A stretch of 64,000 nucleotides of DNA, taken from the NCBI RefSeq assembly GCF_006345805.1, contig NC_043001.1:18414001-18478000 (forward strand), given 5' to 3'. Source of the stretch: Octopus sinensis. Taxonomy: Eukaryota. The stretch's first letter is position 1. Each line of letters begins with the position of its first letter. The translations under genes and the position numbers were made by a program. Under the pieces are notes generated by a model. It made no database searches. It was not told the origin of the DNA and was given only the letters and a program-made list of their open reading frames with translations. Shown here piece by piece: positions 43,701 to 63,144 of this stretch.

Positions 43701-44104
43701 GAGGGGCGGGCACCACAGAAACGGTAAAAGCTGTCATTTAAAACTTGCTAAAATAATATTCGAAATGGTTTATACGATCAGAAATATAATTTCGAAGTAT
43801 TCATGGACTTAAGATGTATTCTGTTGGAATTGTAGTTTATCGTTTCTTTGTTTTCTCGCTATTTCTTCCCATGGGACACACTGTTTATGTATGGCAATAA
43901 AAATGTTAATTTGGCACATAAACGATAATTATTTAAGTTATTACATACTTTTACATTGCAATAAGAAGAGTAAAAGTATTTGTAAAAGTTACCTTTCGCA
44001 TTTGGTGTAATAAAAGGCCACGTATTTATGACTAGAGGTAAGTTTGAACCTGCAGCTCTAGCGACGACAATTAGGAGGAATAACAAACACACCTTCTGTG
44101 ACAT
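20378..44104 (-). CDS. AGA: Aspartylglucosaminidase paralogue B, complete; 8 coding exons, 1053 nt, 350 aa
   Basis: Exons 43993-44104, 32081-32240, 29829-29941, 28474-28586, 26988-27190, 24393-24500, 21018-21151 and 20378-20487. Boundaries are GT-AG and the phases join into one open frame ending in TGA. Motifs NTWPF, HDTIG, GRVGDSP, ATGNGD, RFLPS and GAAC are all present. Confidence 0.97.
21018..21151 (-). CDS. AGA: AGA-B exon 7 ([45 protein letters not shown])
   Basis: Acceptor ttctttcag, donor gtaggt, 134 nt. Confidence 0.95.
21596..21914. mobile_element. Foldback element with ~85-bp terminal inverted repeats around the hammerhead (Penelope-like derivative)
   Basis: 21596-21682 is the reverse complement of 21831-21914 except for one mismatch and small indels. 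Attribution to Penelope-like elements is inferred from the hammerhead. Confidence 0.7.
21728..21788 (+). ncRNA. Type I hammerhead ribozyme motif inside a foldback element
   Basis: Stem I TTGCCG/CGGTAA; core CTGAAGA (21734-21740); stem II GGGG/CCCC; GAAA (21768-21771); stem III ATTG-GAC-CAAT; cleavage triplet AUA (cut after 21782). Confidence 0.75.
23212..23430. mobile_element. piggyBac-type MITE (TTAA-CCCTTTC...GAAAGGG-TTAA); further copies at about 59130-59347 and 59371-59574
   Basis: CCC/GGG termini flanked by TTAA; three similar copies in the window. Confidence 0.75.
23752..23970. mobile_element. hAT/Charlie-type MITE; related elements at about 30056-30812 and 36902-37196
   Basis: TIR cagtgcttttcaa...ttgaaaaccact. 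Confidence 0.6.
24393..24500 (-). CDS. AGA: AGA-B exon 6 ([35 protein letters not shown])
   Basis: Acceptor gtttgcag, donor gtcagt, 108 nt; carries the substrate-binding Arg and Asp of RVGD. Confidence 0.96.
24620..25005 (-). mobile_element. tRNA-derived SINE family 4 (gtggaggcgcaatggcccagtggttagggcagcggact...gtaaccgacggagtgcttcc)
   Basis: Near-identical copies at about 40150-40525(-) and 46888-47205(+, internally deleted); A-box and B-box in the head. Confidence 0.85.
25495..25915 (+). mobile_element. tRNA-derived SINE family 2 with a CORE-like ccttgggcaagtg segment and a (gagtaaa)n tail
   Basis: Near full-length copies also at about 50770-51185(-), 55795-56210(+) and 56495-56900(-). Partial copies at about 1214-1390, 11150-11555, 12105-12245, 20555-20790, 21265-21420, 58755-58915, 62060-62210 and 63775-63930. 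Confidence 0.85.
26988..27190 (-). CDS. AGA: AGA-B exon 5 ([15 protein letters not shown]...[31 protein letters not shown])
   Basis: 203 nt, with the same boundaries as the copy A exon. Confidence 0.96.
28096..28245. repeat. Compound (CCG)n-(CCA)n-(TCA)n trinucleotide tract
   Basis: Read directly from the sequence. Confidence 0.95.
28474..28586 (-). CDS. AGA: AGA-B exon 4 ([38 protein letters not shown])
   Basis: 113 nt, GT-AG. Confidence 0.96.
28675..29051 (+). mobile_element. Non-autonomous Helitron-like element
   Basis: 5' tctatataaa followed by a (ctgt/gt)-rich tract; 3' gcaacgccgggcgatactgCTAGt. Similar 3' ends at about 39855-39878(+) and 22057-22085(-). Confidence 0.6.
29405..29774 (+). 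mobile_element. Second copy of the tRNA-head/hammerhead element (AGA-B intron 3)
   Basis: Same structure. CTGATGA at 29689-29695 and GAAAC at 29717-29721; the left inverted arm retains GAAACGTTGTGTT. Confidence 0.7.
29829..29941 (-). CDS. AGA: AGA-B exon 3 ([37 protein letters not shown])
   Basis: 113 nt, GT-AG. Confidence 0.96.
32081..32240 (-). CDS. AGA: AGA-B exon 2 ([54 protein letters not shown])
   Basis: 160 nt, GT-AG. Confidence 0.96.
32840..33720 (+). mobile_element. Decayed LINE ORF1/gag-like fragment with a CCHC zinc knuckle
   Basis: [14 protein letters not shown] (CX2CX4HX4C) in ORF 33201-33413, followed by an acidic/basic tail ([15 protein letters not shown]); interrupted by stops and frameshifts. 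Confidence 0.65.
34898..35309. mobile_element. Foldback element with ~90-bp TIRs
   Basis: 34898-34989 is inverted at 35220-35309. Confidence 0.75.
37753..37975 (+). mobile_element. mariner transposase C-terminal remnant
   Basis: [23 protein letters not shown] ... [24 protein letters not shown], matching the mariner YSPDLAPSD motif region. Confidence 0.8.
40525..40712. repeat. Long (TA)n-rich microsatellite
   Basis: Read directly from the sequence. Confidence 0.95.
43993..44104 (-). CDS. AGA: AGA-B exon 1 ([37 protein letters not shown])
   Basis: ATG at 44104, signal peptide, donor gtaact. Confidence 0.95.
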
Positions 44105-44554
44105 GATTCAAGAAGAAATGAAATTCAAGTATGGGCTTAGAGTTATCTCCCCTTAGAGGGAAGGTCAGCCATGCAACGAGCTTCGAGGAAAGGGTAATTC
44201 GAAACGACTCCTTATTTCGACTTTAGACTCGTAATTCTTGTTGTTCCATTGTTTATTCTGTGTTGTTTTAACATGTATTTGCTTTGTTTTGTAAATGGGT
44301 TTATTGCCTTCTCCAGAAACTCTTAGTTGATGTTGAAATGTATTGAAAACTATTTGTTTTTCGCTCGAAGTGTTATGAACGAACGGAGTAAAAGTTTGAT
44401 CGATCACGTAATTACCTTTGCGACTGTAAGGGACTTCGAAGCGAAACCTAATTGATTTGATGAATTTATGAGGTTAAAATACATGAAGTGTGGAAGCAAA
44501 TAGAACATTTTTAAAGTTATCAAACCCATGAAACTTCAACTGGCATATATATAC

Positions 44555-44591
<37 letters not shown>

Positions 44592-44716
44592 CTAAGTAAT
44601 TAAGGGTTTAGCAACGATTTGCTCCTTGAATGGGGCTTTTACATGCCGAAATCTACTTGGTGAAATTGATGATTATTCCAAATTAATTAATTTCACCCTA
44701 TATTATTATTGGTAAT

Positions 44717-44762
<46 letters not shown>

Positions 44763-44893
44763 TAAATTAGAGATAAAACCACTATTAGGCAATCAAACAA
44801 TGAAAAACTTAAGCCAATACATAAAATTAATTAATTTATATTATTTTAAATATATATCAAAAGTATTAAAAGTTTAATAAAAGATAATGAGTA

Positions 44894-44930
<37 letters not shown>

Positions 44931-47331
44931 TATACTGTGGTAACCTTCATACACTGACCGCAACATTTGGAAATAGCCTGTGTTTCGGTAATTATTTATA
45001 GTGACGGCTTTTAAGTGAAATTAAAACACTGTATAATATATGTGTGTGTGTATATAAAGTGTGTAAATTGTGTGTGAAACTTGATGTATTTGATGTACTT
45101 TGAGTCGACACCGCTGAGCGTTTAAGTCTTATGTAATACAATTTAAATGGTTGTAAATTTATTTATTATATATATATATGCGTTACATTGAATCTCAAAT
45201 TTGTTGACTGGGGAATATATATGATTCCATACTGAATTTTAAGTTTAGTATGGTATTTTATAACGTGCATATGTTTGTTTATTCCTCGTTATGACGAATC
45301 TTCCCATCTTTGTTCTTGTTACGAAGCTCGAATATAAAACTCAACCGGCGCCGTATTTTCCATTATTAGTTACTCGCTAATCTTCCTTCTTTTGTACAGG
45401 AGGGAGCCCCAACGACATAAAGTTTATTTATCATCTCCATCGTTTTTATATCCGTCTTTTCTCTGCTTACATGTGTTGGTGGATCTTGAAGAACAAGATT
45501 CTTTTTGCCACATGGACTGGACACATTTTATCGCACCACTGACGCTAGAGAGAGATTGTCTGGGATATGAGACGTTTTGGCGTTGCTGGTTCGATGCCGA
45601 CTTATTTGAAACCAAACGTTTTTATATTTTTATATTCCTCACGTTTTAATGGTTCTCTCTCTTTCCCTCCATCTCTCTGTTTATGTGTGTGAGGGTATTT
45701 CTCGATGTGTAAGAGGAGAGGAAAATTGTTTATGTCAATTGTCTTCCTTGAATAGATTATAATGTCTCTCTCCCTCACTCTATCTATATGTGTATATTTC
45801 TGTTCGTGCATACATGTGTGTGTTCGTGCATTTACTTCCAACACCAGTATTGTCACCAAAACAAGCTGAATGTCCAGTCAGTCATACCAAATTGTCAGCA
45901 TCAGTCCATAGATGTAGATTTTCCTCTACCCTTTTTGGAGAATTCTATATTTTATCTGGAGTTAGTGCCTTCATAGGTGAGGGGTTTTTTTTTGTGATAC
46001 TACGGGTAGAGACCATATATCCTTCAGTCATCATCATCATTTAATGTCCATCTTCCATGCATGGGTCGGACAGTTCACAGGAGCTGGTGGGGTTGAAAAA
46101 CTGCCCTAGGCTACTGTGTCTGTTTTGGCAGCGTTTTTTATGGCTGGATGCCCTTCCTAACATCAACCACTCTGTACAGTGGACTCAGTGCTTTTTACGT
46201 GGCACTAGCATAGGCGAGATTAGTTATAGCATGATTTTTACAGCTGGATACCCTTCCAAATGCCAACCACTTTACAGTGTGGACTGGATGCTTTTACATG
46301 GCATCAGCACTGGCAGGGTCACCAAGTAACTCACAAGAATGGAATTATGAGAGGAGCAGGGGTATTTGAAGAGGGGAACTTGTGTGAGAGGGTGAAAGGT
46401 TAGAGTGTGATAAAAAGGCAGAGACAGAAACAGGTGTCTTGCTATAATGGAGGGGACATTGGAAGACGTGATCCAATATTACGGCGAGCTGGCAGAAACG
46501 TTAGCACGCCGGGTGAAATGCTCAGCAATATTTCATCTGCCTTTACGCTATGAGTTCAAATTCCGCCGAGGTCGACTTTGCCTTTCATCCTTTCGGAGTC
46601 GATAAATTAAGTACCAGTTACGCACTGGGTCGATATAACTGACTTAATCCGTTTGTCTGTCCTTGTTTGTCCTCTCTGTGTTTAGCCCCTTGTGGGTAGT
46701 AAAGAAATAGGTAATGTGTATCATATGTGATGTATGGATGCTGAGGAAATATGTCCTGTGTATCATATGATATATAGTAAAGGCAGAGGGTTAAGAAGGA
46801 CATCAAATGTATTACTCTCACCAATCTTAGAAGACTAAGATATCCTTGTTGACAAGCCCCTTCCTCTAGATGTAGCTATTAAATAACGTGGAGGCACAAT
46901 GGCCCAGTGGTTAGGGCAGCGGACTCGCGGTCATAGGATCGCGGTTTCGATTCCCAGACCGGGCGTTGTGAGTGTTTATTGAGCGAAAACACCTAAAAGC
47001 TCCACGAGGCTCTGGCAGGGGATGGTGGTGATCCCTGCTGTACTCTTTCACCACAACTTTCTCTCACTCTTACTTCCTGTTTCTGTTGTACCAGCACGTG
47101 TCTGTGGAGTGCTCAGCCACTTACACGTTAATTTCACGAGCAGGCTGTTCCGTTGATTCGGATCAACCGGAACCCTCATCGTCGTAACTGACGGAGTGCT
47201 TCCACTATTAAATAACATAAATTCTCTAAACACATTGATGGAACATTAGGATTAAGGGTTAGAAAGAGCAAGGCTAGTTGATAATTGTTTAATAAAATAA
47301 TTTAGAAAGTTTTCTTTCTTTTCAGTTAACA

Positions 47332-47511
47332 ATGTTGAAGCAATTGAAAGCCTTTGCCAAAAATTACACGGTGCTGCTTGTTATGATCCCTTCAGTAATT
47401 GCCGTACATGTTGGTTGGTACTATATGCAATTTAATCCTGATTTAGTTGAGCCTGAAAGACAAGAGATTGGGATTTTGGGAAAATTAATCAAGAAAACCC
47501 CAAAAGAATAA
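47332..47511 (+). CDS. 59-aa single-TM microprotein, homologue of the MKKS upstream ORF uMKKS1 (MLKQLKAFAKNYTVLLVMIPSVIAVHVGWYYMQFNPDLVEPERQEIGILGKLIKKTPKE*)
   Basis: Lies wholly inside exon 47326-47535 (acceptor ttttctttcttttcag, donor gtaagt). ATG has A at -3. NYTVLLVMIPSVIAVHVGWY matches human uMKKS1 DYKVLVVMVPLVGLIHLGWY as recalled; no database search was run. Confidence 0.88.
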   Translation: MLKQLKAFAKNYTVLLVMIPSVIAVHVGWYYMQFNPDLVEPERQEIGILGKLIKKTPKE

Positions 47512-47989
47512 ATAAGAAACTCCAAATTACCCAAAGTAAGTTAATGTTTGTCATAATTATTGGAAAAAACCCCAATTCCTTAAAATTTTTTTTTTGTTTA
47601 ATTTGTTTTCTGTCTGATATCAAGTGAGGGCTAAATTATTAAGGAACATGGCCTAGTGGTTAGGCTGCTGTACTCATGATTGTGAGATCTTGGTTTCAAT
47701 TTCTGGACTGGGTGGTGTGTTGTGTTCTTGAGTAAGCCACATTATTTCATATAGCTCTGCAGTCACCTCAACATCTGATGTTTGGCACACTATGCACCTG
47801 TACAGGTAATGTTGATTTGATGGAGGGACTGAGCTAATATGTAACATGAACATTTTAGCACTACAAGCAAATAGTCTCTGTGATGGTTGCTAAGCAAGTT
47901 GTTGTGGGACCCTCATCTATCTTTTATGACTGGATAATCCACAAACTATCGTAACCAGACTTACATCATTTTAAGGGTATTTTAAGAAA

Positions 47990-48545
47990 TTATAATAATA
48001 ATGAAATTATTGTATACGGTGCTCAGGTGCACCACAACTTGTCAAAAGTGTGTATAAAGCATATGCAGTAATGTACAAATGCCTGCAAAGTGAACAATGT
48101 ATGAGTCAGATACATGCTTGTGTGTGTATGGAGGGGAGAAAATCAGGTGTAGTGTTGGCGAATCTCAGAAAGCATGGAAGTTTTGAAGGATGCAGTGCTC
48201 CGACAACTAACAACTGATGATGGCAGTTTGTTCCATACTTCAGCAACTCTTAGCGTGAAAAAATGTTTCCGAAAGTCATGGGAGCTGTACTGTTTTCTGA
48301 CTTTGTAATCATGCCCACGGGTGTTAGATGGGTGGAGTTTGAAAAGGTGCTCAGAGTTATTGTTAGTAAGATGGTTAATAATTTTATGGGTGTCTGCCAA
48401 GTCAGCTGCCAGACGTTGGAGTTTGAAGGTATCCATGTCCAGGGAAGTAAGGCATTCAGAATATGGCAAATGCCTGATGGAGGGTATTGTCTTGGTTGCA
48501 CGTCGCTAAACAGTTTCCAGACAATATCCTGGGCAAGATAGGGGT
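47990..48545 (-). mobile_element. CR1/L2-type LINE 3' fragment
   Basis: ORF 48143-48469 ends TRGHDYKV..RKHFFTLRVAEVWNKLPSSVV..S..SFK, followed by a 3' UTR with an (att)n tail. Confidence 0.85.
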
Positions 48546-49495
48546 TCCAGACTGGTGATGCAAATTATTTCTACTATTTCAACTTTACTACTTTCTAACC
48601 ACAAAATAATTAATCACTCACTTTGGAGCAGCTATGAAATGAGTCATTCTAGTAATGTATTACATTAAAATTTTGATGTGAATTCATAATGAACTTTGGC
48701 AAGTTAGGCATGAATGTCTGTTTCCACCCCATTAACTTAGTTGATAAGGATTCCTAGGTATCTAAGGTTATCCATATCATCTTGTGCAGTCATGGACAAA
48801 CTACAGTCCGCAGGCCACGTATCTTTCTGAATGACACCTTCAACAAAATAATTACCTTGAATTTTATAATAGTGTGTCTCACCTGATGATGAGCCCTGTC
48901 TCATGTAGCCTGCTTCTTGTAAAATGTTGCCCATGACTGGTCTAGTGGTTTGCCATTGGCAGTGATAGTTGATGGGCTGTTTATGTGCATGATTTGTGTT
49001 TTTGATGAAGATTCTGTTTGCATTGCATAATTGTTCAGCCTATGAATTCTCTTAAGTCAATGATTTCTCTTTGAAGAGAGGGTTGCCAAATCAGGAAGAG
49101 ACTGGGAAAGAGTATACAGCCATCTCATCATCATCATTGTTTAACGTCCGTTTTCCATGCTAGCATGGGTTGGACGGTTCGACTGGGGTCTGGGAAGCCA
49201 GGAGGCTGCACCAGGCTCAGTCTGATCTGGCAGTGTTTCTACAGCTGGATGCCCTTTCTAATGCCAACCACTCCATGAGTGTAGTGGGTGCTTTTTACAT
49301 GCCACCGGCACAGGTGCCAGGCGAGGCTGGCAACGGCCACTTTCGGTTGGTGCTTTTTATGTGCCCAATCTGGATTTCATTGAAAACTATTGAGAGAGTT
49401 TCTTCTTAATTATCAAATTGCATTAAGAAATCTTATACACCACTGATATTAAATTTATATATATATATATTTTTCAATTCTAGGATTTGCCAAAC

Positions 49496-49660
49496 ATGTC
49501 TCTAAGAACAGTTTTCCAGTCGGCTGCTAATTGGGCCCATAGCAACAAGTTTGTTTCCTTGATAGTCATCACATCTGTTATGTACTTAGCAACATATCCA
49601 TTGAAAACTCCAAAAATCGCTACTTCTGAAGAGAGAATTGCTAAATCATCACCAAAATAA
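49496..49660 (+). CDS. 54-aa single-TM microprotein, probable homologue of uMKKS2 (MSLRTVFQSAANWAHSNKFVSLIVITSVMYLATYPLKTPKIATSEERIAKSSPK*)
   Basis: Lies inside exon 49484-49663 (acceptor ttttcaattctag, donor cag|gttagt). ATG has A at -3. Gapless W-x3-N-x13-L-x-T-Y-x-L pattern shared with recalled human uMKKS2 (WIRKNWLLVAGISFIGVHLGTYFL). Confidence 0.78.
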   Translation: MSLRTVFQSAANWAHSNKFVSLIVITSVMYLATYPLKTPKIATSEERIAKSSPK

Positions 49661-51288
49661 CAGGTTAGTTACAAATTTCAAAAATATTTTAATTGCTTTA
49701 ATTTTGTATTCAGGGACTGATCTTCAAAAACTATTCTTTATAGATTAGCAAATGAAAATTGTTTATTTTATTTTTTGTTCCTCTTGGCTTTTAAAAATTG
49801 TATGTGGAAATGGTTGTGTAGTTCTCCTTGTAGTATAAGATATGGATTCAGAGAATTGTGTGGCTATCATAGAAAGCTCTTCTAACAGATTTGGCTAACA
49901 GACCACATAGTAATGCAGAATGAATATCCATGCAGCTGGATACCCTTCTTAATGCCAACCACTGGCAATGGCACTAGATATGATTACTAAGTGACTTGCA
50001 AGACATGACCCCTCAACTGAGAGGGGACTAGTATTGAGGGTGGTGGTTTTATTGCAGAGGATGCGAGGTTGAAATATGATGGAGGAGGTAGGTGTGTGTC
50101 AGGGAGGTAATAGGTGGCAGCAGAGACAACCCCTAATATACATATTAGGAGAAGCCAACATAGGAAGCTTCATGCAGTCACTCAGACTAGAAAACAACAG
50201 GGAATCTTCTTCAAATCACAATCTACTGTATTAAACAAAACATTTTAGGTAATGTAGGGATCACAAATTGATCACATCATCATCATCATCATCGTTTAAT
50301 GTCCGTTTTCTATGCTAGCATGGGTTGGATGGTTTGACCGGAGTCTGGGAAACCAGGAAGCTGCACCAGGCTCCAATCTGATCTGGCAATGTTTCTACAG
50401 CTGGATGCCCTTCCTGATGCCAACCATTCCGTGAGTGTAGTGGGTGCTTTTTACGTGTCACTGGCACAGGGGCCTGAGGAGGCTGGCAACTGGCCACAAT
50501 CGGTTGGTGCTTTTTACGTGTCACCGACACAGACGCTAGTCAGGCGGTGCTGGCATATCCATGAATATCTTTACTCATGGCTCTACTCAATTAGAATTGA
50601 CCTGTAGCAGTAAGACTACAGTAGCAGATATAGCTAAAATTATTGCAAAGTATATTTTACTTGTGAGATTGTCTGTCTCACAATATTTATAGAAAGATTT
50701 TCTTAAATTAAAATTATCAATTATATGAAAAAAAAAAAAAAACTCTGTTCTTTAAAGATTTTTCTATACTCTCTCTTTTACTCTTTTACTTGTTTCAGTC
50801 ATTTGACTGCGGCCATGCTGGAGCACCACCTTTAATCGAGCAACTCGACCCCGGGACTTATTCTTTTGTAAGCCCAGTACTTATTCTATCGGTCTCTTTT
50901 GCCGAACCGCTAAGTAACGGGGACATAAACACACCAGCATCGGTTGTCAAGCAATGCTAGGGGACATACAGACACACAAACACACACACGCATATATATA
51001 TATATATATATATACATATATACGACGGGCTTCTTTCAGTTTCCGTCTACCAAATCCACTCACAAGGCTTTGGTCGGCCCGAGGCTATAGTAGAAGACAC
51101 TTGCCCAAGGTGCCACGCAGTGGGACTGAACCCGGAACCATGTGGTTGGTAGACAAGCTACTTACTACACAGCGACTCCTGCGCCTATATGGTTAATAAT
51201 TTTTAATTTAAGAAAATTTTTCTTCAAACATATATTTGCATATAATATGTGTGTGTATATATTTCATGTGTTTATATGTGTATGTATG

Positions 51289-51321
<33 letters not shown>

Positions 51322-51548
51322 TTACATACATACCTCTCTGTCTCTATATATGTATATATCTGTTTGTGTGTATGTGTATATATATCATCATCATCATCAT
51401 CGTTTAGCATCCACTTTCCATGCTAGCATGGGTTGGACGGTTCAACTGGTGTCTGGGAAGCCAGAAAGCTGCACCAGGCCCAGTCTGATCTGGCAATGTT
51501 TCTACGGCTGGATGCCCTTCCTAACGCCAAGATGCCCTTCTTAACGCC

Positions 51549-51579
<31 letters not shown>

Positions 51580-51621
51580 TACATACATACCTCTCTGTCT
51601 GTATATATGTATATATCTGTC

Positions 51622-51665
<44 letters not shown>

Positions 51666-51810
51666 AGTACATTCTCTGTCTCTATATATGTATATATCTG
51701 TTTGTGTGTGTATATATATATATATATATACACAAGCACACGTTTACCTGTCTGTCTGTTTATATATATATATATATATCTGTATATATTTCAGAGTATA
51801 TAATTGAATA

Positions 51811-52801
51811 ATGCAGGAAGTTACTGAAACTAAACTCCTACGTGGCAAACTCACAGACAAGGAAACAGTGCACCAACTCAATTCACTTAGGCATTTATTT
51901 TCCACCACAGTTGGCCCTTATGGAGGCATTAAGCTACTGCGTAATAACTGCGGGGGTCATGTCACACTGACAAGTTCATCATCCAGGTTGCTGGCTGCTC
52001 TGCGACCTACAAATCCTTTAGCACGACTCATAATTGAAGCCTGTTCAAAGCATTCACATACCTACGGGGATGGGGCTCTCTTCATGGCTCATTTTATCCT
52101 AATTCTGATAGACAAAGCTTTGAAACTTGATTTAGATCATAGGTTGATTACCAAAGTAAATTCTTTTCTTCTTGAATTATTTCTTAGTCATTTAAAATCA
52201 GATGATTTCTCCTGTAAAATGGCTGTAGAAATATCTGATGTTAATTCTTTGTGTCAGGTGGCCAGTACGATGTTGTCATCAAAACCATTGTACCAGCTAG
52301 ACGAGCAGCTGCTAAAGTTGATGAGTTCTGTACTCTTAGAAACCTTCATTAGAAGCCTTCCTTCTGAAAGACAGGACAGTTCCTTAAGACCCATCTTAGA
52401 CAATATACATATCATTGGCATTCCTGGTGAAGAAACACATAATTCTTTCTGTTGTGAAGGATTATTGCTTGAGGCTACAAACATCAAAGAAGTGCTGTCA
52501 TGGCAAACACAGAGAGAATCTCTGGAGAATATTTGTACAGTTGTAGTAAATGTATCTATGGCAGGAGATTCTATAGAGCTACCTCAGTTGACTTATGCCA
52601 GTACCAGCCTTAAAGAACTTGAGCAAAGCTTTCTTTCTCATTTGGAGTCATTCTGTTCTGGACTCATATCAAAAGGCATTAGAATTTTATTCTGCCAGAA
52701 AGTGGTTCACCCTTGTCTAAAAGACCAACTGAGAAGAAACGGTGTATTGGTTTTTGATCGTCTTGGTGCTTTGCTGTGCTCCAAAGTTATCAATTTAACA
52801 G
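51811..52801 (+). CDS. MKKS: MKKS coding exon 1
   Basis: Long ORF from MQEVTETK; donor g|gtaatt at 52802. Confidence 0.95.
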
Positions 52802-55800
52802 GTAATTAGTTAATTATTTTAAACTGACATTTATCATCATCATTATCATTTAGCGTCCGCTTTCCATGCTAGCATGGGTTGGACAGTTCAACTTGGGTCT
52901 GGGAAGCCAGAAGGCTGCACCAGGCCCAGTCTGATCTGGCAATGTTTCTACGTCTGGATGCCCTTCCTAACGCCAACCACTCTGTGAGTATATTGGGTGC
53001 TTTTTACGTGCCACCGGCACAGGTCCCAGACGGGGTTGGAAAACGGCCACGGTCGGATGGTGCTTTTTACGTGCCACCAGCACGGGGACCAGGCGGGTTG
53101 TATTAAATTATGTTTAATATGTCCTTATAATAAATGAACAAGAGCCAATGTTAGCTTTGGCTAAGTTTCTACAGTTGGATGCTCTTTCTCATGTCAATCA
53201 CTAGATGCTTTTTTCCATGTCACCATTCCTAGTGAGGTCTCTAAAAGAACAGGAAAATAATAAAAACTCCTTTGATTATGTGTGTGTGTGTGAACATGGC
53301 TGTTGCTAGTACTGCCTGACTGGCCCTCGTGCTGGTGGCACGTAAAAGCACCCACTACACTCTCGGAGTGGTTGGCGTTAGGAAGGGCATCCAGCTGTAG
53401 AAACTGCCAGATCAGATTGGAGCCTGGTGCAGCCACCTGGTTCACCAGTCCTCAGTCAAATCGTCCAACCCATGCTAGCATGGAAAGCGGAGGTTAAACG
53501 ATGATGATGATATGTGTGTGTGTGTGTGTTTGGTGAGGAGTATTTGAAAGAGTGGGGAGGTTGTTTTATGCTGGATGTTGAGAGGTTGAAGTGTGATAGT
53601 CTTGCTATAGAGGAAATAAATGGCTATGCCATATATAATGGTGGATGGGAGTTACCGGAAAGAAGGTAGAGATGCTGGTGACTAGATACCAGACCATCTC
53701 AAAATACAAGGAGAGTGTAAGAGAGGATAGAGGCAGTGAATGGGGGTGGGAGGGTAATAGTTAGAAATAGGGGTAGAAGTGAATGTAATGAGTGAACAAG
53801 AATGGATATGCAATTGATGGGGAATACCAGGATGGAGAGGGAATAGGGTTAGAGAGATAGAAGTGGCTCAAGAAAGAGAATGTATCAGAAAATAGGGTTG
53901 TAGGGGTGTGATGTGCATGAGGATGTAGCGGTGGGGAGGGAGATGTAGGGATAAATAATAGGTGATGCATGATGGGTGATATGGTAGGGTGTTGAGAATG
54001 ATAGTAGATATGAGAGATGTTAAGACAGGGTATGGCAGAGGAAAGAGTGCAATGGCTGAAGGTACAGAAAAGGGAGCAATGAAAATAGTGTGGGGAAAGA
54101 ATCATAATGAAATGAGAGATGGAAGGGGGTTCCAAGAGGGAAGGGAGGTAACTGGAAGTACAAAGAAAAATTTAGATGGAATATGTGTTGGTTTTGCTCT
54201 CAAGTGATTGCCGCAGCAGGGTAGTGCCATAGACAGAGGAGTGATGATTGCCAGAGAATGAAATGTGGGGAATGCTTGACAGGGTAGAAAGGCAGCGCTC
54301 CGGTCAGGTTTGACTTGGGGCTGGATGCCCTTTCTGATGCTGATCACTAGATGCTTTTTTCATGTCACCATCCCTAGTGAGGTCTCTAAGTAACTTGCAA
54401 GATAAAAAAAGAACAAAAAAAAAAAAAACTCCCTTGATTATGCATGTGTGGGGGTGAGTATTTGTGAGAGTGGGGAGATGGGACCAAACAACAACAATGC
54501 TAGCAGTGATTTAATCTTGATGGTCTATACTGTTTAAAATATATTTTCAGATTCCGTTCCAATTAGTTCATTTTCATCAGCTTGCTCTCCAGATCAATTA
54601 GGGAAAATCAGTAAATTCTCGGTCATGGATGTTTTCGGAAAGCAGTGGCTTCATCTGAATCAGATATCCAGCAGTTTAACTACCCTTGTAGTTTGTAGTC
54701 AAATGGAAGAACAGCTTGAAGAATTAAAGGTTGGTTTGTCTCCTTTCTATAAGTGTTAGAATTGCAAGGAATTCTTTCCTTTTATTGATTTCATGATCAT
54801 CATCATCGTTTAACGTCCGCCTTCCATGCTAGCATGGGTTGTACGGTTCGATTGGGTTCTGGGAAGCCATGAGGCTGCACCAGGCCCAGTCTGATCTGGC
54901 AGTGTTTCTACAGCTGGATGCCCTTCCTAATGCCAACCACTCCGTGAGTGTAGTGGGTGTTTTTTATGTGCCACCGGCACAGGGGCAATATTTTAATTTC
55001 ATCATCACCATTTAATGTCCATCTTTCCATGCTTGTGTGGGTTGGCTGGATTTTGTTGGGGTGGATTTTTTACTGCCAGATGCCCTTCCTGTTGCTAACC
55101 CTTATCTATTTCCAAGTAAGGTAATATTTCCCCATGTCTAAAATTCTCTCAGAAGATTGGAAATGGACACTGCTTGTAGTACAGTGACACTTGTTTACAA
55201 CTATCACAAAATGTCAAGGCTAAAAGACAGTAACACACACACACACGAGGACTTCCTTTCATTTTCCATTTAGCATATTCTCTCACAAGGCTTTGGTTGA
55301 CCCAAGGTAGTGTAGCGGGGAGCTGGCAGAAATGTTAGCACGCTGGGCGAAATGCTTTGTGGTATTTTATCTGTTGCTGCGTTCTGAGTTCAAATTCTGC
55401 CGAGGTCGACTTTGCCTTTCATCCTTTCGGGGTCGATAAATTAAGTACCAGTTACGCACTGGGGTCGATGTAATTGACTTAATCCGTTTGTCTGTCCTTG
55501 TTTGTCCCCTCTATGTTTAGCCCCTTGTGGGCAATAAAGAAATAAGGTATTGTAGAAATTTACCCAAGGTGCTACACAATGCAACTGAACCTGGAACCAT
55601 GTAGTTAGGAGGTAAAGTGCCTACTTTTATTAATGTTTATAAATACTTTTGCTCCTCAAGAATAGCTGGACTTGTACTGCTTCCACTTTGGCTATCTTAT
55701 CTCATTAGTCTCTTCTCTTCCTGCCATCATTCTTGTTGTACCTCTTAGTGTTTGTCGTTTATACAACAAGTGACAGACGAAAAAGGGAGTATATAGGTGC

Positions 55801-58800: not shown

Positions 58801-61800
58801 TGGGTTCAGTCCCACTGCATGGCATCTTGGGCAAGTGTCTTCTAATACATCCCAGGGCCGACCAAAACCATCCTCTGTCAATTTGGTAGATGGAAACTGA
58901 AAGAAGCCTATTGTACGTGTGTTGTGTGTGTGTGTGTTTACCCATGTCTTGACATGTGATGATTGTAAATCAGCCTTCTAAGAAACATATGTCAGGTTTT
59001 GGGGAAATATTACCTTACCTGGAAACAGGTGGAGGTTGGTGATAGAAACAGGTGGAGGTTGGCTGTAGGAAACCTGCCTCAACAAATTCTGTCCTATTCA
59101 TTCTGCCATGTAAAAGTAGACATTAATGTTACCAAGCCGGCTGAAACTGACTCTGGCTCTGTAGTACAAATGTCTTGTTTTCATAAGTTTTGAATTAAAA
59201 ATCTTCCACCAAACCTTAGTCACAATTTATGTTCCTAACACTAGCTTAATGATTACTAAGTTATTTTACTAAATTCTTTGTTATATTTAAAATTAATTGA
59301 AAGAAACACAGAGCATCTCAACAGAAATATGGTCGCAAAAGGGTTAAAATATATAATAGAGAAACAACTCTTAACCCTTTCGTTACCAACCCAGCTGAAA
59401 CCGGCTCTGGCTCTGAGTACAAATGTCTTGTTTTCATAAGTTTTGAATTAAAATCTTCCACCAAACCTTAGTCACAATTTATGTTAAGTTATTTTACTAA
59501 ATTCTTTGTTATCTTTAAAGTAATTGAAAGAAATACAGAGCATCTTAAAATAAATACAGTAATGAAAGGGTTAAAGCAACAAGGATGAATGTATTCATTT
59601 CTCTAAATTCCATCAATCATGAAACAGAAGTGACACTCAGTGATAATCCTTCTAAAGTAGGATAAGTTGGTATTTGTAAGCCTGTGGAATGTCTTTGAAT
59701 GGATTTTAAGTCGAGAGAGGTATTTATGTAGTTCATGTTTAATTCCATTGGTTTTTTTATTTTATGTATTTTGTTCAATTTTAACAGGTGAATTGCAACA
59801 ATGTGATGTTAGCATTCCAGCACCTTCTCAGGACACCGGCTGTACTGCACGGTGGGGGCTGCTGGCAGTTCACTTTGGCTAACAAGCTTAGAGTTGAGGT
59901 AAAACTATTTTCTCTGCATTATTTACATTATTTACATTCAACAGATATTTGTCCTCATCTTTGTTCTTAACACAATGTTTTAGCTGATATACCCTCCAGC
60001 CTTCTTCAGGTGTCTTGGGGAAATTTCATACTATTTTCTCTATTGGTTACTTGGAATATTTTCTTATTTGTTCTATCCTTTACTCATCTCTTCAGTATTT
60101 AGTCTCCAACTCATCTTCTCTTGAAATATTTATCATACACTTCCTTGCTTCCCATCTACAAGGATTCAGGGTCAGTCCCACTGCATGACATGTTGGGCAA
60201 ATGTCTCCTGTTATAGCATCTAGCTGACCAAAGCCTTATGAGTGAGTGGATTTGGTTGGTGGAAATTGAAAGAAGCCTGTTTGGTGTATGTGTGTGTGTG
60301 CATGTATCATCATGATCATCATCATTTAACATCCGGTATGGCTTGGACTCTTTTACCAGGGTTGGTAAGCTGAGGGGCTGCACCAGACTCCAGTCTGATT
60401 TGGCATGGTTTCTACGGCTGGATGCACTTCCTAATGCCAACCATTCCAAGAGTGTAATGAATGCTTTTGTGTGCCACCAGCATGTGTGCCATTTGCGTGA
60501 CACCAGAATCTGCCATGACTATAATTTTACTTGGCTTCATGAGTCTTCTACTGAAGCATGGCAAATTGCTAAAGGAAGGTCTCAGTGATAATTTCTTTTT
60601 GGTTGGTAGAAATTGAAAGAAGCTCTTGCTTGGGATGGAAACTGAAAGAAGCCTATTGTACATGTGTTGTGTGTGTGTGTTCACCCATGTCTTGGCATGT
60701 GATAATTGTAAATCAACCTTCTAAGAAACACGTCAGGTCTTGTGGTGAGCTGGTAGAATTGTTAGCAAACCAGACAAAATACATGTAACAGACTTGGTAA
60801 GATCTGGTACTCAAACCCTCCGCCCGCGTTAAAAGTTAAAATATTTAGAACACTGATTGAGCCAGTCCTTCTCTATGGATCAGGGACCTTGACCTTATTG
60901 GCTCCCTTAGAAAAGCAACTAAATGGAACATATACCAACCTGCTCAGAAAGATACAGAACATCAGTTGGAGATCACTCCCAACACTTAGTAACATTTATG
61001 GAAATCTGATAGCAATATCCCTCAAGAGCAGAAACGGCTACAATTTACTGACCACTGTCATCGAGCAGAGAAAAAGGTTATCTCATCCCTATTCTTATGG
61101 CATCCCTCTGGAAGTGTTTTCTCCAGGAAACTGACATTTCCAGGTACTATATCACAGAACTCATGGCTGGATATTAGAGAGTTTCAATGGAGTTCTGACC
61201 AACCATAGGCTGGTCGAAGGAAGGTGATGATGATGATGAAAGGTCTAGGTCATATGTCATTGCCTCTGCGTGGCCCTATGCTTGAAAGGTGCTTCTCACC
61301 TGCCATAGGCATGGGTGCTAGTTACACGGCACCAGCATCAGCCACATTGCCTCTGTGAGGTCACACACACACATATATATATCATAGTTGTGGTTGATGC
61401 TAGTGTCACATATTGTTTCTCATCATCATCATTGTTTAACGTCTGCTTTCCATGAGGGCTGGTGAACCAGATGGCTGCACCAGGCTTCAATCTTGATCTG
61501 GCAGAGTTTCTACAGCTGGATGCCCTTCCTAACACCAACCACTCTGAGAGTGTAGTGGGTGCTTTTACATGCCACCAGCACGGGGCCAATCAGGCGGTAG
61601 TGGCAACGACCTTGCTGTAATCTTTTACACATGCCACCGGCACAGGTGCCTGTAAGGTGACGCTGGTAATGATCACGCTTGAATGGTGTCTTTTATGTGC
61701 CATCGGCACGGAGGCCAGATAGCCGCTCTGGCAACGATCACGCCTGAATTGTGCTCTTTAAGGTGACACTGGTAACGATCACCCTCAAATGGTGCCTTTT

Positions 61801-62423
61801 AAGTGCCACTGGCACAGAAGCTGGTTAGCCGCTGTGCTATTCTATCTATTCTCCAGCATTCAGATTTCTGTGTCAAATGTGATGCTTATTTATTTACATT
61901 GTCTTGAATTAATTGTCTGTTATCTCATAGATTCAAGATTTCGGTGATGTGGTTGTTTATTTTTAGAATGACATTGAAGGGTAGGTGTGAGAGGCTGGAC
62001 CTGACTTTTTCCAACATAATACAGAATATTTGAGTCTAATATTGCTTGCAAAGACCTGTTGAATATTTCCGTCTACCAAATCTACTCACAAGGCTTTGGT
62101 CGGCCCAAGGCTACAATAGAAGATACTTACCCAAGGTGCCACACAATGGGACTGAACCCAGAACCGTATAGTTGGGAAGCAAAATTCTTACCACACAGTC
62201 ATACCTGCACCTATATTGTATGTTTTTAAATGGCTAATAGTATTTTATGATTATTTTTAATAATGTATTCTAGTTTTGGAGAGACCAGTGTCATTGGTAA
62301 AATGGAATTAAAAGATATTCTTAATATTTATTTGTTAGTTGTTTTTTATGCATATTTGCACTGGTGTGATTGTGGTAAGAAGCTTGCTTCCCAACCATAT
62401 GGTTTCAGTCTTATTATTATTAC

Positions 62424-62462
<39 letters not shown>

Positions 62463-62483
62463 TATTATTATTATTATTATTAC

Positions 62484-62519
<36 letters not shown>

Positions 62520-62622
62520 TATTATTATTATTATATTATTATTATTATTTTTATTATTATTATTTTTATTATTATTATTATTATTATTATTGTTTTTATT
62601 ATTATTATTATTGTTATTATTA

Positions 62623-62657
<35 letters not shown>

Positions 62658-63144
62658 TTTTTGCCTATTTCAGGTTTCTGAAAATTTAGAAAGCTTCTCC
62701 AGTAAACTGGATTGTTCCGAGTCCCAGTTATTGCAGCTGTGTGATTATCTATGCACAAGTTTGGAACAAGCTGTTTCCCCATCTTCTCAGCAGGGCAAGA
62801 AATGTTTCACCCATCCTTCAGCTGGTCATCTTTGGATACAGGATGACCATGAAGTTAACGCAGAAAAAACTTGTTCATGTGGTGTGCTTTGTTGTAGTTT
62901 GTCAGATTTGAAACTTCAACCTTTAGAACATTCTCCTTCATTTGACAGATTTTCTAAGAAAGAGCTTTATGGCTCTTATAAACCTCTTGATACAATATCC
63001 AGTTCTGAACCTCCTAAGAAACCTCTTCTAATGGACTGCTTTATTCCATGGCAAACTGCTGTAGAAATATCGGTACTTCTAGCCAATATGGCTCTTAGTA
63101 CCAATCAGTTTATCTTTGACACCAACTGTAAACCATCAACATAG
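51811..63144 (+). CDS. MKKS: McKusick-Kaufman/Bardet-Biedl syndrome 6 chaperonin-like protein; 4 coding exons, 1752 nt, 583 aa
   Basis: Exons 51811-52801 (acceptor at 51794), 54551-54729, 59788-59898 and 62674-63144 join in frame. Motifs GP.G.IK..N..GGHV.LTS.SS.LL, GDGALF, LSSKP, CQKVVHP.LK..L....DRLG, GGGC, GHLW, CSCG and LMDC are present. The exon pattern (991/179/111/471) parallels human MKKS as recalled. Confidence 0.93.
54551..54729 (+). CDS. MKKS: MKKS coding exon 2 (DSVPISSFSSACSPDQLGKI...VVCSQMEEQLEELK)
   Basis: Acceptor attttcag, donor gttggt; phase 1 in, phase 0 out. Confidence 0.88.
59788..59898 (+). CDS. MKKS: MKKS coding exon 3 (VNCNNVMLAFQHLLRTPAVLHGGGCWQFTLANKLRVE)
   Basis: Acceptor ttttaacag, donor gtaaaa, 111 nt, GGGC motif. 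Confidence 0.92.
60797..61240 (+). mobile_element. Decayed RTE-like LINE C-terminal fragment
   Basis: KIWYSN..LKVKIFRTLIEPVLLYGS..LT....LNGTYTNLLRKIQNISW. Confidence 0.65.
62413..62657. repeat. (ATT)n tract of about 245 bp just upstream of the last MKKS acceptor
   Basis: Read directly from the sequence. Confidence 0.95.
62674..63144 (+). CDS. MKKS: MKKS last coding exon (VSENLESF...IFDTNCKPST*)
   Basis: Acceptor ttttttgcctatttcag; ends in TAG at 63142-63144. Confidence 0.92.
   Translation, partial: VSENLESFSSKLDCSESQLLQLCDYLCTSLEQAVSPSSQQGKKCFTHPSAGHLWIQDDHEVNAEKTCSCGVLCCSLSDLKLQPLEHSPSFDRFSKKELYGSYKPLDTISSSEPPKKPLLMDCFIPWQTAVEISVLLANMALSTNQFIFDTNCKPST

What the first reader, a model, noticed from the sequence alone, without database searches (positions are those of the whole stretch)
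49496..49660. Unannotated 54-aa microprotein, probable uMKKS2 homologue
Sequence: MSLRTVFQSAANWAHSNKFVSLIVITSVMYLATYPLKTPKIATSEERIAKSSPK. It has a presequence-like N-terminus, one TM segment and a basic tail. Over 25 gapless positions it shares W, N, L, T, Y and L with recalled human uMKKS2 (WAHSNKFVSLIVITSVMYLATYPLK vs WIRKNWLLVAGISFIGVHLGTYFLQ). Identity is low, so the syntenic position between uORF1 and MKKS is an essential part of the evidence. The TM ends of both peptides (HVGWY and YLATY; HLGWY and HLGTY in human) resemble each other, which hints that they are ancient tandem paralogues.
Basis: partly seen in the sequence, partly recalled or inferred. Interest (0 to 1): 0.85.

Follow-up and report, generated by a model that had tools for sequence, protein, structure and literature searches.

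The report
Conserved membrane microprotein upstream of octopus MKKS
A 54-codon reading frame just upstream of the octopus MKKS gene is a real, selectively conserved gene for a tiny membrane protein of an unnamed invertebrate family; it sits where vertebrates have uMKKS2, but its sequence does not show that the two are related.

Summary
The ORF is exactly as described: 49496..49660 (+), 54 aa. It fills its own 180-nt exon (49484..49663) in the 5' leader of MKKS, after the uORF1 exon and 19 nt (spliced) before the MKKS AUG.

It is coding. Argonauta hians has the same 54-codon ORF with the same exon borders (38/54 identical, dN/dS 0.17, introns unalignable). An Octopus vulgaris gene model uses the same exon junction. 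A full-library phmmer search found seven unnamed relatives (E 3e-8 to 7e-4) sharing W-x3-NKF-x-S, a TM segment, Y-x-A-[TS]-x-P-x3-P and ER.

The uMKKS2 homology claim is not supported by sequence:
- I recovered real uMKKS1 and uMKKS2 from Xenopus and a hedgehog-like transcript.
- Octopod uORF1 is a clear uMKKS1 orthologue (hhalign E 4e-10).
- A vertebrate uMKKS2 HMM picks octopod uORF1 first and ranks this ORF 39th of 419.
- hhalign gives E about 0.1.

Position, exon order, size and topology do match uMKKS2. I read it as a new microprotein family in the uMKKS2 slot. Orthology is unresolved (about 0.35). Mitochondrial localisation and translational gating of MKKS are inferred, not shown.

The parts
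49484..49663 (+). Exon 3 of the MKKS 5' leader (180 nt). It holds the whole uORF2 plus 12 nt before it and 3 nt after it.
   Evidence: The acceptor is ttctag| and the donor is |gttagt. The borders are the same in Argonauta (L001 8805..8984). It is the only unique colinear conserved block in this stretch between the two species. It is 180/180 identical to O. vulgaris, against 96.5-97.3% in the flanking introns. The O. vulgaris model P0001 splices 47535 directly to 49484.
49496..49660 (+). uORF2 coding sequence: 54 codons plus TAA. It is a member of an unnamed invertebrate microprotein family (alignment A1).
   Evidence: Searches confirm the ORF. dN/dS against Argonauta is 0.166, versus 0.79-0.89 in the other two frames, which also carry 4-5 stops. 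phmmer gave hits at E 3e-8 to 7e-4. A family HMM built without the octopods scores it 80.8 bits, E 1e-24.
49553..49603 (+). Codons 20-36: the predicted single transmembrane segment VSLIVITSVMYLATYPL.
   Evidence: This is the best 17-residue hydropathy window (mean 1.74), and it falls at the same place in all family members. It contains the conserved S21, Y30, A32, T33 and P35.
47326..47535 (+). Exon 2 of the leader, carrying uORF1 (47332..47511, 59 aa), the octopod orthologue of vertebrate uMKKS1.
   Evidence: Searches give the ORF and exon. hhalign of the octopod pair against the vertebrate pair gives Prob 96.7%, E 4.3e-10. A vertebrate uMKKS1 HMM ranks it first, E 7e-10. dN/dS against Argonauta is 0.155.
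44131..44193 (+). Putative first leader exon, known only from the coding part of an annotated model. The transcription start is unknown.
   Evidence: The N-terminus of O. vulgaris protein P0001 maps here and is spliced to exon 2. This exon is not conserved as such in Argonauta. The conserved block next to it (43986..44110) belongs to the divergently oriented Asparaginase_2 gene.
51795..52801 (+). First coding exon of MKKS. The ATG is at 51811, 19 nt downstream of the uORF2 stop in the spliced mRNA.
   Evidence: The acceptor is tttcag|AGTATA. The 19-nt spacing is the same in Argonauta. The assembled 583-aa protein is 99% identical to O. vulgaris MKKS and carries PF00118.
54551..54729 (+). MKKS coding exon 2.
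   Evidence: Splice sites and reading frame are consistent. The assembled protein matches P0002 over 100% of its length.
59788..59898 (+). MKKS coding exon 3, which contains the GGGC chaperonin motif.
62674..63144 (+). MKKS last coding exon.

Best explanation
The ORF is a genuine protein-coding cistron. It occupies its own small exon, the third exon of the octopod MKKS transcript. The spliced mRNA reads uORF1 (the uMKKS1 orthologue), 36 nt, uORF2, 19 nt, then MKKS.

It encodes a 54-residue single-pass membrane microprotein with three parts:
- a short N-terminal juxtamembrane region with an invariant W and N-K;
- a moderately hydrophobic helix carrying conserved S, Y, A-T and P;
- a basic tail with P...P and E-R.

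It belongs to a previously unnamed family with at least seven other members in public invertebrate-like data.

Inferred function:
- The peptide is inserted into a membrane and acts in trans. By analogy with uMKKS1 and uMKKS2, the membrane is most likely mitochondrial.
- In cis, translation of uORF2 together with uORF1 limits MKKS synthesis. A ribosome that terminates 19 nt before the MKKS AUG is unlikely to reinitiate, so MKKS would depend on leaky scanning or on skipping of the two cassette-like uORF exons.

Evolutionarily, it is the positional counterpart of vertebrate uMKKS2 but a distinct sequence family. Common descent with uMKKS2 is possible and not demonstrated.

Shown here: the ORF, its exon, purifying selection, family membership, and synteny with a true uMKKS1 and MKKS. 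Inferred: translation, membrane insertion, mitochondrial location, and the effect on MKKS translation.
For: - ORF and splice sites.
- Argonauta hians has a 54-codon ORF with identical exon borders. It shares 38/54 residues, dN/dS is 0.166, Fisher P is 1.5e-6, the other frames are neutral and full of stops, and the introns are unalignable.
- The exon is 180/180 identical to O. vulgaris while the flanking introns differ by about 3% (P = 0.003).
- O. vulgaris model P0001 joins the uORF1 exon to this exon at the predicted sites.
- Family evidence: seven real phmmer hits out of 1.84 billion proteins (an eighth is a repeat artefact). The invariant residues in alignment A1 are W13, N17, K18, S21, P35, P39 and E46. 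The leave-octopods-out HMM scores the ORF 80.8 bits.
- A single TM segment with basic flanks is seen in all members.
- Synteny anchors: uORF1 equals uMKKS1 at E 4.3e-10. The MKKS protein is 99% identical to O. vulgaris MKKS.
- The 19-nt uORF2-stop to MKKS-AUG spacing is conserved in Argonauta.
- Xenopus also has uMKKS1 on its own exon, followed by an intron and then the exon with the second microprotein.
- Human uMKKS1 and uMKKS2 are reported to be translated, to lie in mitochondrial membrane fractions, and to repress MKKS translation (PMC11837024; PMC13577902; PMC7530721).
Against: - There is no RNA-seq, Ribo-seq or proteomic evidence for octopus in these tools. Transcript evidence is one annotated gene model, and its CDS is mis-framed.
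- The organisms and genomic context of the seven family members are unknown. It is therefore not shown that the family is generally tied to MKKS.
- No localisation signal could be tested. The N-terminus is not a canonical presequence.
- The statement that the family is distinct from uMKKS2 rests on negative results with only two vertebrate uMKKS2 sequences.
The thrips uORF also resembles this family's N-terminus (permutation P about 0.005, uncorrected). Both hint at a deeper relationship.
Confidence: 0.75

Rival explanations
1. The ORF is the true orthologue of vertebrate uMKKS2. On this reading, the bilaterian ancestor already had the tricistronic uMKKS1-uMKKS2-MKKS gene, and the second cistron diverged beyond profile detection in the lineage leading to octopods.
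For: - The order of cistrons and exons is the same in octopods and Xenopus. In both, uMKKS1 has its own exon, an intron follows 21-31 nt after its stop, and the next exon carries the second TM microprotein.
- Size is similar (50-51 versus 54 aa), both have a single TM segment, and both flanks are basic, unlike the neutral tail of uMKKS1.
- The best gapless register aligns W, N, T and Y at identical spacing.
- A non-vertebrate, non-cephalopod transcript (L003) has a uMKKS2-like second uORF (permutation P <= 0.0015, hhalign E 0.012). The duplication may therefore predate vertebrates.
Against: - hhalign of A1 against vertebrate uMKKS2 gives E 0.098, Prob 0.6%. Octopods alone give E 0.11, in a different register.
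- The vertebrate uMKKS2 HMM ranks this ORF 39th and 52nd of 419 random ORFs, and picks octopod uORF1 first.
- The reverse HMM ranks uMKKS2 at 75-215.
- Permutation P is about 0.2.
- The family evolves slowly yet lacks the K-N-aromatic ... H-x-G-x-Y signature. uMKKS2 has kept that signature well enough to hit octopod uORF1 at E 4.5e-6.
- L003's uMKKS2-like ORF shows no similarity to this family.
Confidence: 0.35
2. The exons 44131..49663 form a separate small gene or short transcript that encodes the microproteins independently of MKKS. The ORF would then not be a uORF of the MKKS mRNA in practice.
For: - The O. vulgaris annotation models these three exons as a gene separate from MKKS.
- In human, alternative polyadenylation and isoforms lacking the main ORF produce uMKKS-only transcripts (PMC11837024; PMC13577902).
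Against: - The donor site after the ORF (AACAG|gttagt) is conserved in Argonauta (TAACAA|gtttgg).
- The MKKS start exon has an acceptor 16 nt before its ATG, giving a 19-nt spliced spacing in both species. That points to splicing onward into MKKS.
- No AATAAA is visible in the first ~120 nt of the intron.
- The two possibilities can coexist.
Confidence: 0.2
3. The peptide matters only in cis. On this reading it is a conserved-peptide regulatory uORF whose nascent chain stalls ribosomes to tune MKKS, with no free-standing protein function.
For: - The sequence-dependent repressive effect of the human MKKS conserved uORF was reported in PMC7530721.
- The ORF ends 19 nt before the MKKS AUG.
- The C-terminal T-S-x-E-R is conserved.
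Against: - Conservation spans the whole peptide and is strongest in the N-terminal W/NKF motif and the hydrophobic helix. That pattern is typical of a membrane protein rather than an arrest peptide.
- Relatives occur as separately called small ORFs on seven other sets of contigs.
Confidence: 0.1
4. It is a chance ORF in a non-coding 5' UTR exon, and the exon is conserved for RNA-level reasons.
Against: - Differences from Argonauta are concentrated at third codon positions (12/10/26). dN/dS is 0.17 in frame and about 0.8-0.9 out of frame. Length, start and stop are all retained.
- Protein-level homologues exist at 39-55% identity.
Confidence: 0.03

Closest known systems
uMKKS2 (vertebrate MKKS upstream ORF 2 microprotein, 50 aa in human, UniProt V9GZ13)
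   Same: It is the second small ORF in the MKKS 5' leader, downstream of uMKKS1 and upstream of the MKKS AUG. It sits on the exon that follows the uMKKS1 exon. It is about 50 aa with one TM segment and basic flanks.
   Different: There is no significant sequence similarity by hhalign, HMM or permutation. It lacks the K-N-W ... H-x-G-T-Y signature that links uMKKS2 to uMKKS1. It has its own invariant residues (W13, N17, K18, S21, P35, P39, E46). In octopods it ends 19 nt before the MKKS AUG, against 171-203 nt in the hedgehog-like transcript and Xenopus.
uMKKS1 / micro-MKKS63 (63 aa in human, UniProt Q9HB66)
   Same: It comes from the same locus and is the same kind of product, a uORF-encoded single-TM microprotein. 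The neighbouring octopus uORF1 is its orthologue.
   Different: uORF2 shows no significant similarity to the uMKKS1 family (E 0.13-0.67; permutation not significant). Only the N-terminal third of the thrips uMKKS1-like uORF resembles it weakly.
Other uORF-encoded or small-ORF mitochondrial membrane microproteins (MIEF1-MP, SLC35A4-MP, mitoregulin, BRAWNIN, STMP1)
   Same: They share its size class, a single hydrophobic helix of moderate hydrophobicity, and encoding on a polycistronic or 'non-coding' transcript (review PMC11837024).
   Different: No sequence relationship was found. There are no Pfam hits at E <= 10, and the only solved-structure matches are non-significant (E >= 1) to unrelated large proteins. 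Localisation of the octopus peptide is untested.

Membership tests
uMKKS2 (vertebrate MKKS uORF2 microprotein) | Encoded in the MKKS 5' leader between uMKKS1 and the MKKS start codon, on the same strand. | tested here: met
   The order is uORF1 (47332..47511), this ORF (49496..49660), then the MKKS ATG at 51811. uORF1 equals uMKKS1 at hhalign E 4.3e-10. The MKKS protein is 99% identical to O. vulgaris MKKS.
uMKKS2 (vertebrate MKKS uORF2 microprotein) | Significant sequence similarity to vertebrate uMKKS2 (profile or HMM). | tested here: not met
   hhalign gives E 0.098 and 0.11. The uMKKS2 HMM gives 0.1 bits, rank 39/419. The reverse HMM ranks uMKKS2 at 75-215. Column-permutation P is about 0.18-0.23. 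Only two vertebrate sequences were available.
uMKKS2 (vertebrate MKKS uORF2 microprotein) | Paralogue signature shared with uMKKS1 (K-N-aromatic, TM, H-x-G-[WT]-Y). | tested here: not met
   Vertebrate uMKKS2 against octopod uORF1 gives E 4.5e-6. This ORF's family against uMKKS1 gives E 0.13-0.67.
uMKKS2 (vertebrate MKKS uORF2 microprotein) | About 50 aa, with a single transmembrane helix. | tested here: met
   The ORF is 54 aa, against 50-51 aa in vertebrates. It has one hydropathy peak, and both flanks are net positive, as in uMKKS2.
uMKKS2 (vertebrate MKKS uORF2 microprotein) | Translated in vivo and found in mitochondrial membrane fractions. | not testable with these tools
   This is reported for human in PMC11837024. 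No octopus expression or proteomic data were reachable.
Unnamed invertebrate microprotein family (alignment A1: P0015, P0016, P0017, P0019, P0020, P0021, P0022/P0024, Argonauta ORF) | Motif W-x3-N-K-F-x-S, about 13 hydrophobic residues ending Y-x-A-[TS]-x-P, then x3-P ... E-R. Total length is 50-66 aa. | tested here: met
   All motif positions are present. phmmer E values run from 3e-8 to 7e-4 against 1.84 billion proteins. The HMM built without the octopod sequences gives 80.8 bits, E 1e-24.
Unnamed invertebrate microprotein family (alignment A1) | Location upstream of MKKS in the other members. | not testable with these tools
   The members come from unnamed Logan, JGI, ENA and NCBI contigs. 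Their contigs could not be fetched. A pattern scan of metagenome contigs found none.
Conserved-peptide uORF (CPuORF) acting on main-ORF translation | Purifying selection on the encoded peptide of a uORF. | tested here: met
   dN/dS is 0.166, Fisher P = 1.5e-6.
Conserved-peptide uORF (CPuORF) acting on main-ORF translation | Sequence-dependent repression of the downstream ORF. | not testable with these tools
   Only the geometry is known: 19 nt from the stop to the MKKS AUG, conserved in Argonauta.

The most novel reading that the evidence does not exclude
MKKS has been a tricistronic gene since the bilaterian ancestor. On this reading, the invertebrate family found here is the protostome form of uMKKS2. 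Both second cistrons, together with uMKKS1, descend from one ancestral membrane microprotein by tandem duplication. A pair of (mitochondrial) membrane microproteins would then have been co-encoded with a ciliopathy chaperonin for more than 500 million years.
Probability: 0.3. Interest if true: 0.75.

Novelty: new variant of a known kind. Interest (0 to 1): 0.55.

Why it matters
- The MKKS locus is a textbook example of a vertebrate mRNA that encodes functional microproteins besides its main protein. A 2026 study reports that uMKKS1 is the dominant product of the locus in human brain and is needed for microglial respiration (PMC13577902).
- This window shows that the multi-cistron architecture is not a vertebrate peculiarity. 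A cephalopod has a clear uMKKS1 orthologue and a second, strongly constrained membrane microprotein in the same slot. A thrips has a weaker uMKKS1-like uORF.
- The second cistron defines a microprotein family that carries no name in any source I could query.
- It provides a natural comparison for asking why membrane microproteins are kept physically coupled to MKKS.
- The papers I read describe uMKKS conservation only for mammals or as 'highly conserved'. I found no mention of invertebrate homologues, but this was not an exhaustive search.

Tried and rejected
1. A word-indexed search with the 54-aa peptide found nothing. With uORF1 it found only the mis-framed O. vulgaris model P0001.
2. The supplement of PMC7530721 is not held, and searching for V9GZ13 gave only the review. 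I therefore took real uMKKS sequences from genomic and transcript loci instead.
My first hand-typed DNA pattern had one N too many. The corrected pattern hits the window and Argonauta but found nothing in metagenome contigs.
4. Carassius: no GWY or GTY motif lies within 10 kb upstream of MKKS. The lamprey MKKS has no contig on record.
5. There were no Pfam hits at E <= 10 for the A1 family, and only sub-threshold chance-level matches for two of the other uORF peptides (uMKKS2 to FAM209, E 0.082; L003 ORF-A to VPg, E 0.11). The PDB sequence search with the A1 profile gave only non-significant matches, E >= 1.
6. Stop-codon readthrough fusing uORF1 and uORF2: the two are in frame in this window (36 nt) but not in Argonauta (43 nt). 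I rejected this as coincidence.
7. P0018 (1023 aa, 10 stretches) is a low-complexity repeat artefact and was excluded.
8. The organism behind transcript L003 could not be identified. A paper search for the run accession gave nothing, and the cluster members are unnamed.
9. The contigs of the family members found by the representative search were not looked up.

Full report
**Observation**

The ATG ORF at 49496..49660 (+) exists and translates to exactly the 54 residues quoted. It lies inside a textbook internal exon.
- A pyrimidine-rich tract and ttctag precede 49484, and AACAG|gttagt follows 49663.
- The exon holds the ORF plus 12 nt before the ATG and 3 nt after the TAA.
- The exon itself is not repeated elsewhere in the window. 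Only the flanking SINE-like sequence is.

**Context**

Four exons assemble into a 583-aa protein: 51795..52801 (ATG at 51811), 54551..54729, 59788..59898 and 62674..63144.
- The protein is 99% identical to Octopus vulgaris MKKS and 72% identical to Argonauta hians MKKS. It carries PF00118.
- The window is therefore an Octopus MKKS locus. Intron divergence of about 3% from the O. vulgaris assembly suggests a sister species or a divergent haplotype.
- A second small exon, 47326..47535, holds uORF1 (47332..47511, 59 aa, with HVGWY).
- An O. vulgaris 'hypothetical protein' (P0001, 79 aa) was the only database hit to uORF1. It is a gene model that runs from an exon at 44131..44193 into the uORF1 exon and then splices 47535 directly to 49484. 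It uses a cryptic internal intron and the wrong frames.
- The CDS of that model is wrong, but its exon junction is exactly the one predicted from the sequence. This is the only transcript-level evidence I could reach.
- In the spliced leader, uORF1 stops 36 nt before the uORF2 ATG, and uORF2 stops 19 nt before the MKKS ATG.

**Conservation within octopods**

The Argonauta hians locus (L001) has both ORFs in the same order upstream of MKKS.

| Measure | Result |
|---|---|
| uORF2 length in Argonauta | 54 codons, as in the window |
| Amino-acid identity | 38/54 |
| Exon borders | 12 nt before the ATG and 3 nt after the stop, as in the window |
| uORF2 stop to MKKS ATG, spliced | 19 nt in both species |
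| Differences by codon position | 12 / 10 / 26 |
| Nei-Gojobori dN/dS, in frame | 0.166 |
| dN/dS in the other two frames | 0.79-0.89, with 4-5 stops each |
| Synonymous versus non-synonymous, Fisher P | 1.5e-6 |

- Across the roughly 8-kb 5' region, the only unique colinear blocks shared by the two species are the uORF1 exon, the uORF2 exon, the MKKS exon and the first exon of the divergent Asparaginase_2 neighbour.
- Against O. vulgaris the exon is 180/180 identical while the flanking introns differ at about 3% (P = 0.003).
The second (exon absent from transcripts) is contradicted only by the annotated model.

**A family**

The word-indexed search found nothing. A full phmmer pass over 1.84 billion representatives found eight proteins at E <= 1e-3.
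- One, P0018, is a repeat artefact.
- The other seven are P0015, P0016, P0017, P0019, P0020, P0021 and P0022 (with its 59-aa member P0024). The cores of these hits are 50-66 aa.
- They share [SA]A-x-W-x3-N-K-F-x-S, a hydrophobic stretch ending Y-x-A-[TS]-x-P, then x3-P-x-V-x-T-x2-E-R.
- They come from Logan, JGI, ENA and NCBI contigs, and no source gives a name or an organism.
- An HMM built from them without the octopod sequences scores the window ORF at 80.8 bits (E 1e-24) and the Argonauta ORF at 71.8 bits. The next ORF among about 425 scores 5.6 bits.
- There are no Pfam hits at E <= 10, and the only solved-structure matches are non-significant (E >= 1) to unrelated large proteins.

**Testing the uMKKS2 interpretation**

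I recovered real vertebrate sequences by fetching DNA around MKKS genes.

| Source | uMKKS1 | uMKKS2 |
|---|---|---|
| Xenopus tropicalis (L002) | 9035..9229 | 9642..9797, MIKKQTWLRKNWLWVAGISFLGIHFGTYFIQK... |
| Mammalian transcript (L004), whose MKKS clusters with Erinaceus | 306..497 | 559..711, MKNTSWIRKNWLLVAGVSFIGVHLGTYLLQR... |

The tests gave the following.

| Comparison | Result |
|---|---|
| Octopod uORF1 vs vertebrate uMKKS1 (hhalign) | Prob 96.7%, E 4.3e-10 |
| Same pair, column permutation | P < 5e-4 |
| Invertebrate family (A1) vs vertebrate uMKKS2 (hhalign) | E 0.098, Prob 0.6%, 7 columns |
| Octopod uORF2 pair alone vs vertebrate uMKKS2 | E 0.11, in a different register |
| Vertebrate uMKKS2 HMM vs all 419 ATG-ORFs of >= 35 aa in the window plus the Argonauta locus | Argonauta and Octopus uORF1 rank 1 and 2 (E 5.5e-4, 0.011); uORF2 ranks 39 and 52, about 0 bits |
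| Vertebrate uMKKS2 vs octopod uORF1 | hhalign E 4.5e-6; permutation P < 5e-4 |
| Vertebrate uMKKS2 vs whole uMKKS1 family | E 2.4e-5, with a 2-residue indel in the helix |
| A1 vs uMKKS1-type sequences | Nothing (E 0.13-0.67) |

- The synteny anchor is therefore solid.
- 'Ancient tandem paralogues' is a good description of vertebrate uMKKS2 and uMKKS1.
- That description does not extend to this ORF.

**Other taxa**

- A thrips transcript (L009) has a single 68-aa uORF 49 nt before MKKS. Its helix end and following residues match uMKKS1 (H-x2-W-x6-P; hhalign E 0.0023; permutation P < 5e-4).
- The N-terminal third of that thrips uORF weakly resembles the new family (hhalign E 0.012; permutation P about 0.005, uncorrected for about a dozen comparisons).
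- A Logan transcript from an unidentified animal (L003) has two upstream ORFs. Its MKKS is 27-32% identical to the octopus, frog, lamprey and thrips proteins.
- The second upstream ORF in L003 (74 aa, one TM) resembles vertebrate uMKKS2 at the expected register (permutation P <= 0.0015; hhalign E 0.012). It does not resemble the new family.
- In Xenopus genomic DNA, uMKKS1 has its own exon with a donor 21 nt after the stop. A roughly 350-nt intron separates it from the exon that carries uMKKS2. This is the same exon order as in octopods.
- These points keep common descent possible. They also show that a recognisable uMKKS2 type exists outside vertebrates, which makes 'diverged beyond recognition' less comfortable for a family that is otherwise slowly evolving.

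**Mechanism (inferred)**

- All members have one hydropathy peak of moderate strength (mean 1.3-2.1 over 17 residues). The N-terminal flank is net positive in all members and the C-terminal flank in all but one (P0019, net 0).
- Conservation covers the N-terminal W/N-K motif, polar and small residues on the helix (S21, Y30, A32, T33), P35 at the helix end, and P39 ... E46-R47 in the tail.
- That pattern fits a membrane-inserted peptide that packs against a partner helix. It does not fit a nascent-chain arrest peptide.
- By analogy with uMKKS1 and uMKKS2, a mitochondrial membrane is the most likely destination (PMC11837024; PMC13577902). The N-terminus is not a canonical presequence, because relatives carry D and E there.
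- In cis, both uORF AUGs have A at -3 and T at +4 in Octopus and Argonauta. The MKKS AUG follows the uORF2 stop by 19 nt in both species.
- MKKS synthesis should therefore depend on leaky scanning past two uORFs, or on skipping of the two cassette-like exons.
- Nothing here measures translation, localisation or repression.

**Verdict**

- The 'uMKKS2 homologue' label is supported only by position and architecture. The sequence test that defines membership was run and not met.
- I therefore file the ORF as the founding octopod member of an unnamed invertebrate microprotein family in the uMKKS2 slot.
- I put the probability at about 0.35 that it is a diverged orthologue.
- In the papers I could search, uMKKS conservation is described for mammals or simply as 'highly conserved'. 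I found no report of invertebrate homologues, but the search was limited to the held library.

Noticed in passing
window 47332..47511 (+), exon 47326..47535: uORF1 (59 aa) is a clear orthologue of vertebrate uMKKS1/micro-MKKS63. It shares a gapless KNY.VL.VM......VH.GWY....NP motif, and hhalign gives E 4.3e-10. The uMKKS1 cistron therefore predates the protostome-deuterostome split.
   Followed up: yes
L002 9642..9797 and L004 559..711 versus window 47332..47511: Vertebrate uMKKS2 is significantly similar to the uMKKS1 family, with a 2-residue shorter helix. It matches octopod uORF1 (E 4.5e-6) better than vertebrate uMKKS1 (E 0.018). This suggests an old tandem duplication.
   Followed up: partly
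L009 4096..4302 (Megalurothrips usitatus transcript): A thrips has a single 68-aa uORF 49 nt before MKKS. Its C-terminal half is uMKKS1-like, and its N-terminal third weakly resembles the new invertebrate family (uncorrected P about 0.005). It may be a bridging form.
   Followed up: partly
L003 3..161 and 250..474 (Logan transcript SRR16709595, organism unknown): A non-vertebrate, non-cephalopod MKKS transcript has two upstream ORFs. The second (74 aa, one TM) resembles vertebrate uMKKS2. The first is cut at the contig end, right after a ...LAGW... motif.
   Followed up: partly
window 44131..49530 (O. vulgaris protein P0001; L012 10001..15441): The annotated O. vulgaris 'hypothetical protein' of 79 aa is a mis-framed model. 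It threads through the uORF1 and uORF2 exons using a cryptic GT-AG intron inside uORF1. Neither real microprotein is annotated.
   Followed up: yes
window 47509..49498 (spliced): In this window uORF1 and uORF2 are in the same frame, separated by one TAA and 12 sense codons. Readthrough would give a two-helix fusion. The spacing is 43 nt in Argonauta, so this is probably coincidence.
   Followed up: yes
window 44131..44193 joined to 47326: An upstream ATG in the putative first exon is in frame with uORF1 and would give an 82-aa N-terminally extended form. The transcription start is unknown, and the extension is not seen as a conserved block in Argonauta.
   Followed up: partly
window 43986..44110 (-); L001 1..4471 (-); L012 1..9974 (-): An Asparaginase_2-family gene lies head to head with the MKKS leader in Octopus and Argonauta. 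Vertebrate MKKS instead faces a UPF0492 (PF15744) family gene (L002, L011).
   Followed up: no
window 49124..49370, 50277..50530, 51385..51530, 52870..53100 and many others: There are numerous copies of a SINE-like repeat (catcatcat...gtttaacgtccgttttccatgctagcatgggttggacgg...) in the MKKS introns, also shared with Argonauta. Long TA/CA microsatellites lie at about 50950..51790.
   Followed up: no
window 62400..62660: A long ATT/TTA-type simple repeat, read as poly-I/poly-L/poly-Y in the three frames, lies immediately upstream of the last MKKS exon.
   Followed up: no
window 48143..48469 (-): A 108-aa ORF (...HDFRKHFFTLRVAEVWNKLPSSVV...) in the intron between the two uORF exons looks like a fragment of a retroelement. 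It was not searched.
   Followed up: no
L011 1..10000 (Carassius carassius): No uMKKS1-type (GWY) or uMKKS2-type (GTY) motif lies within 10 kb upstream of the carp MKKS start codon. The uORFs may be further away, diverged or lost in cyprinids.
   Followed up: partly
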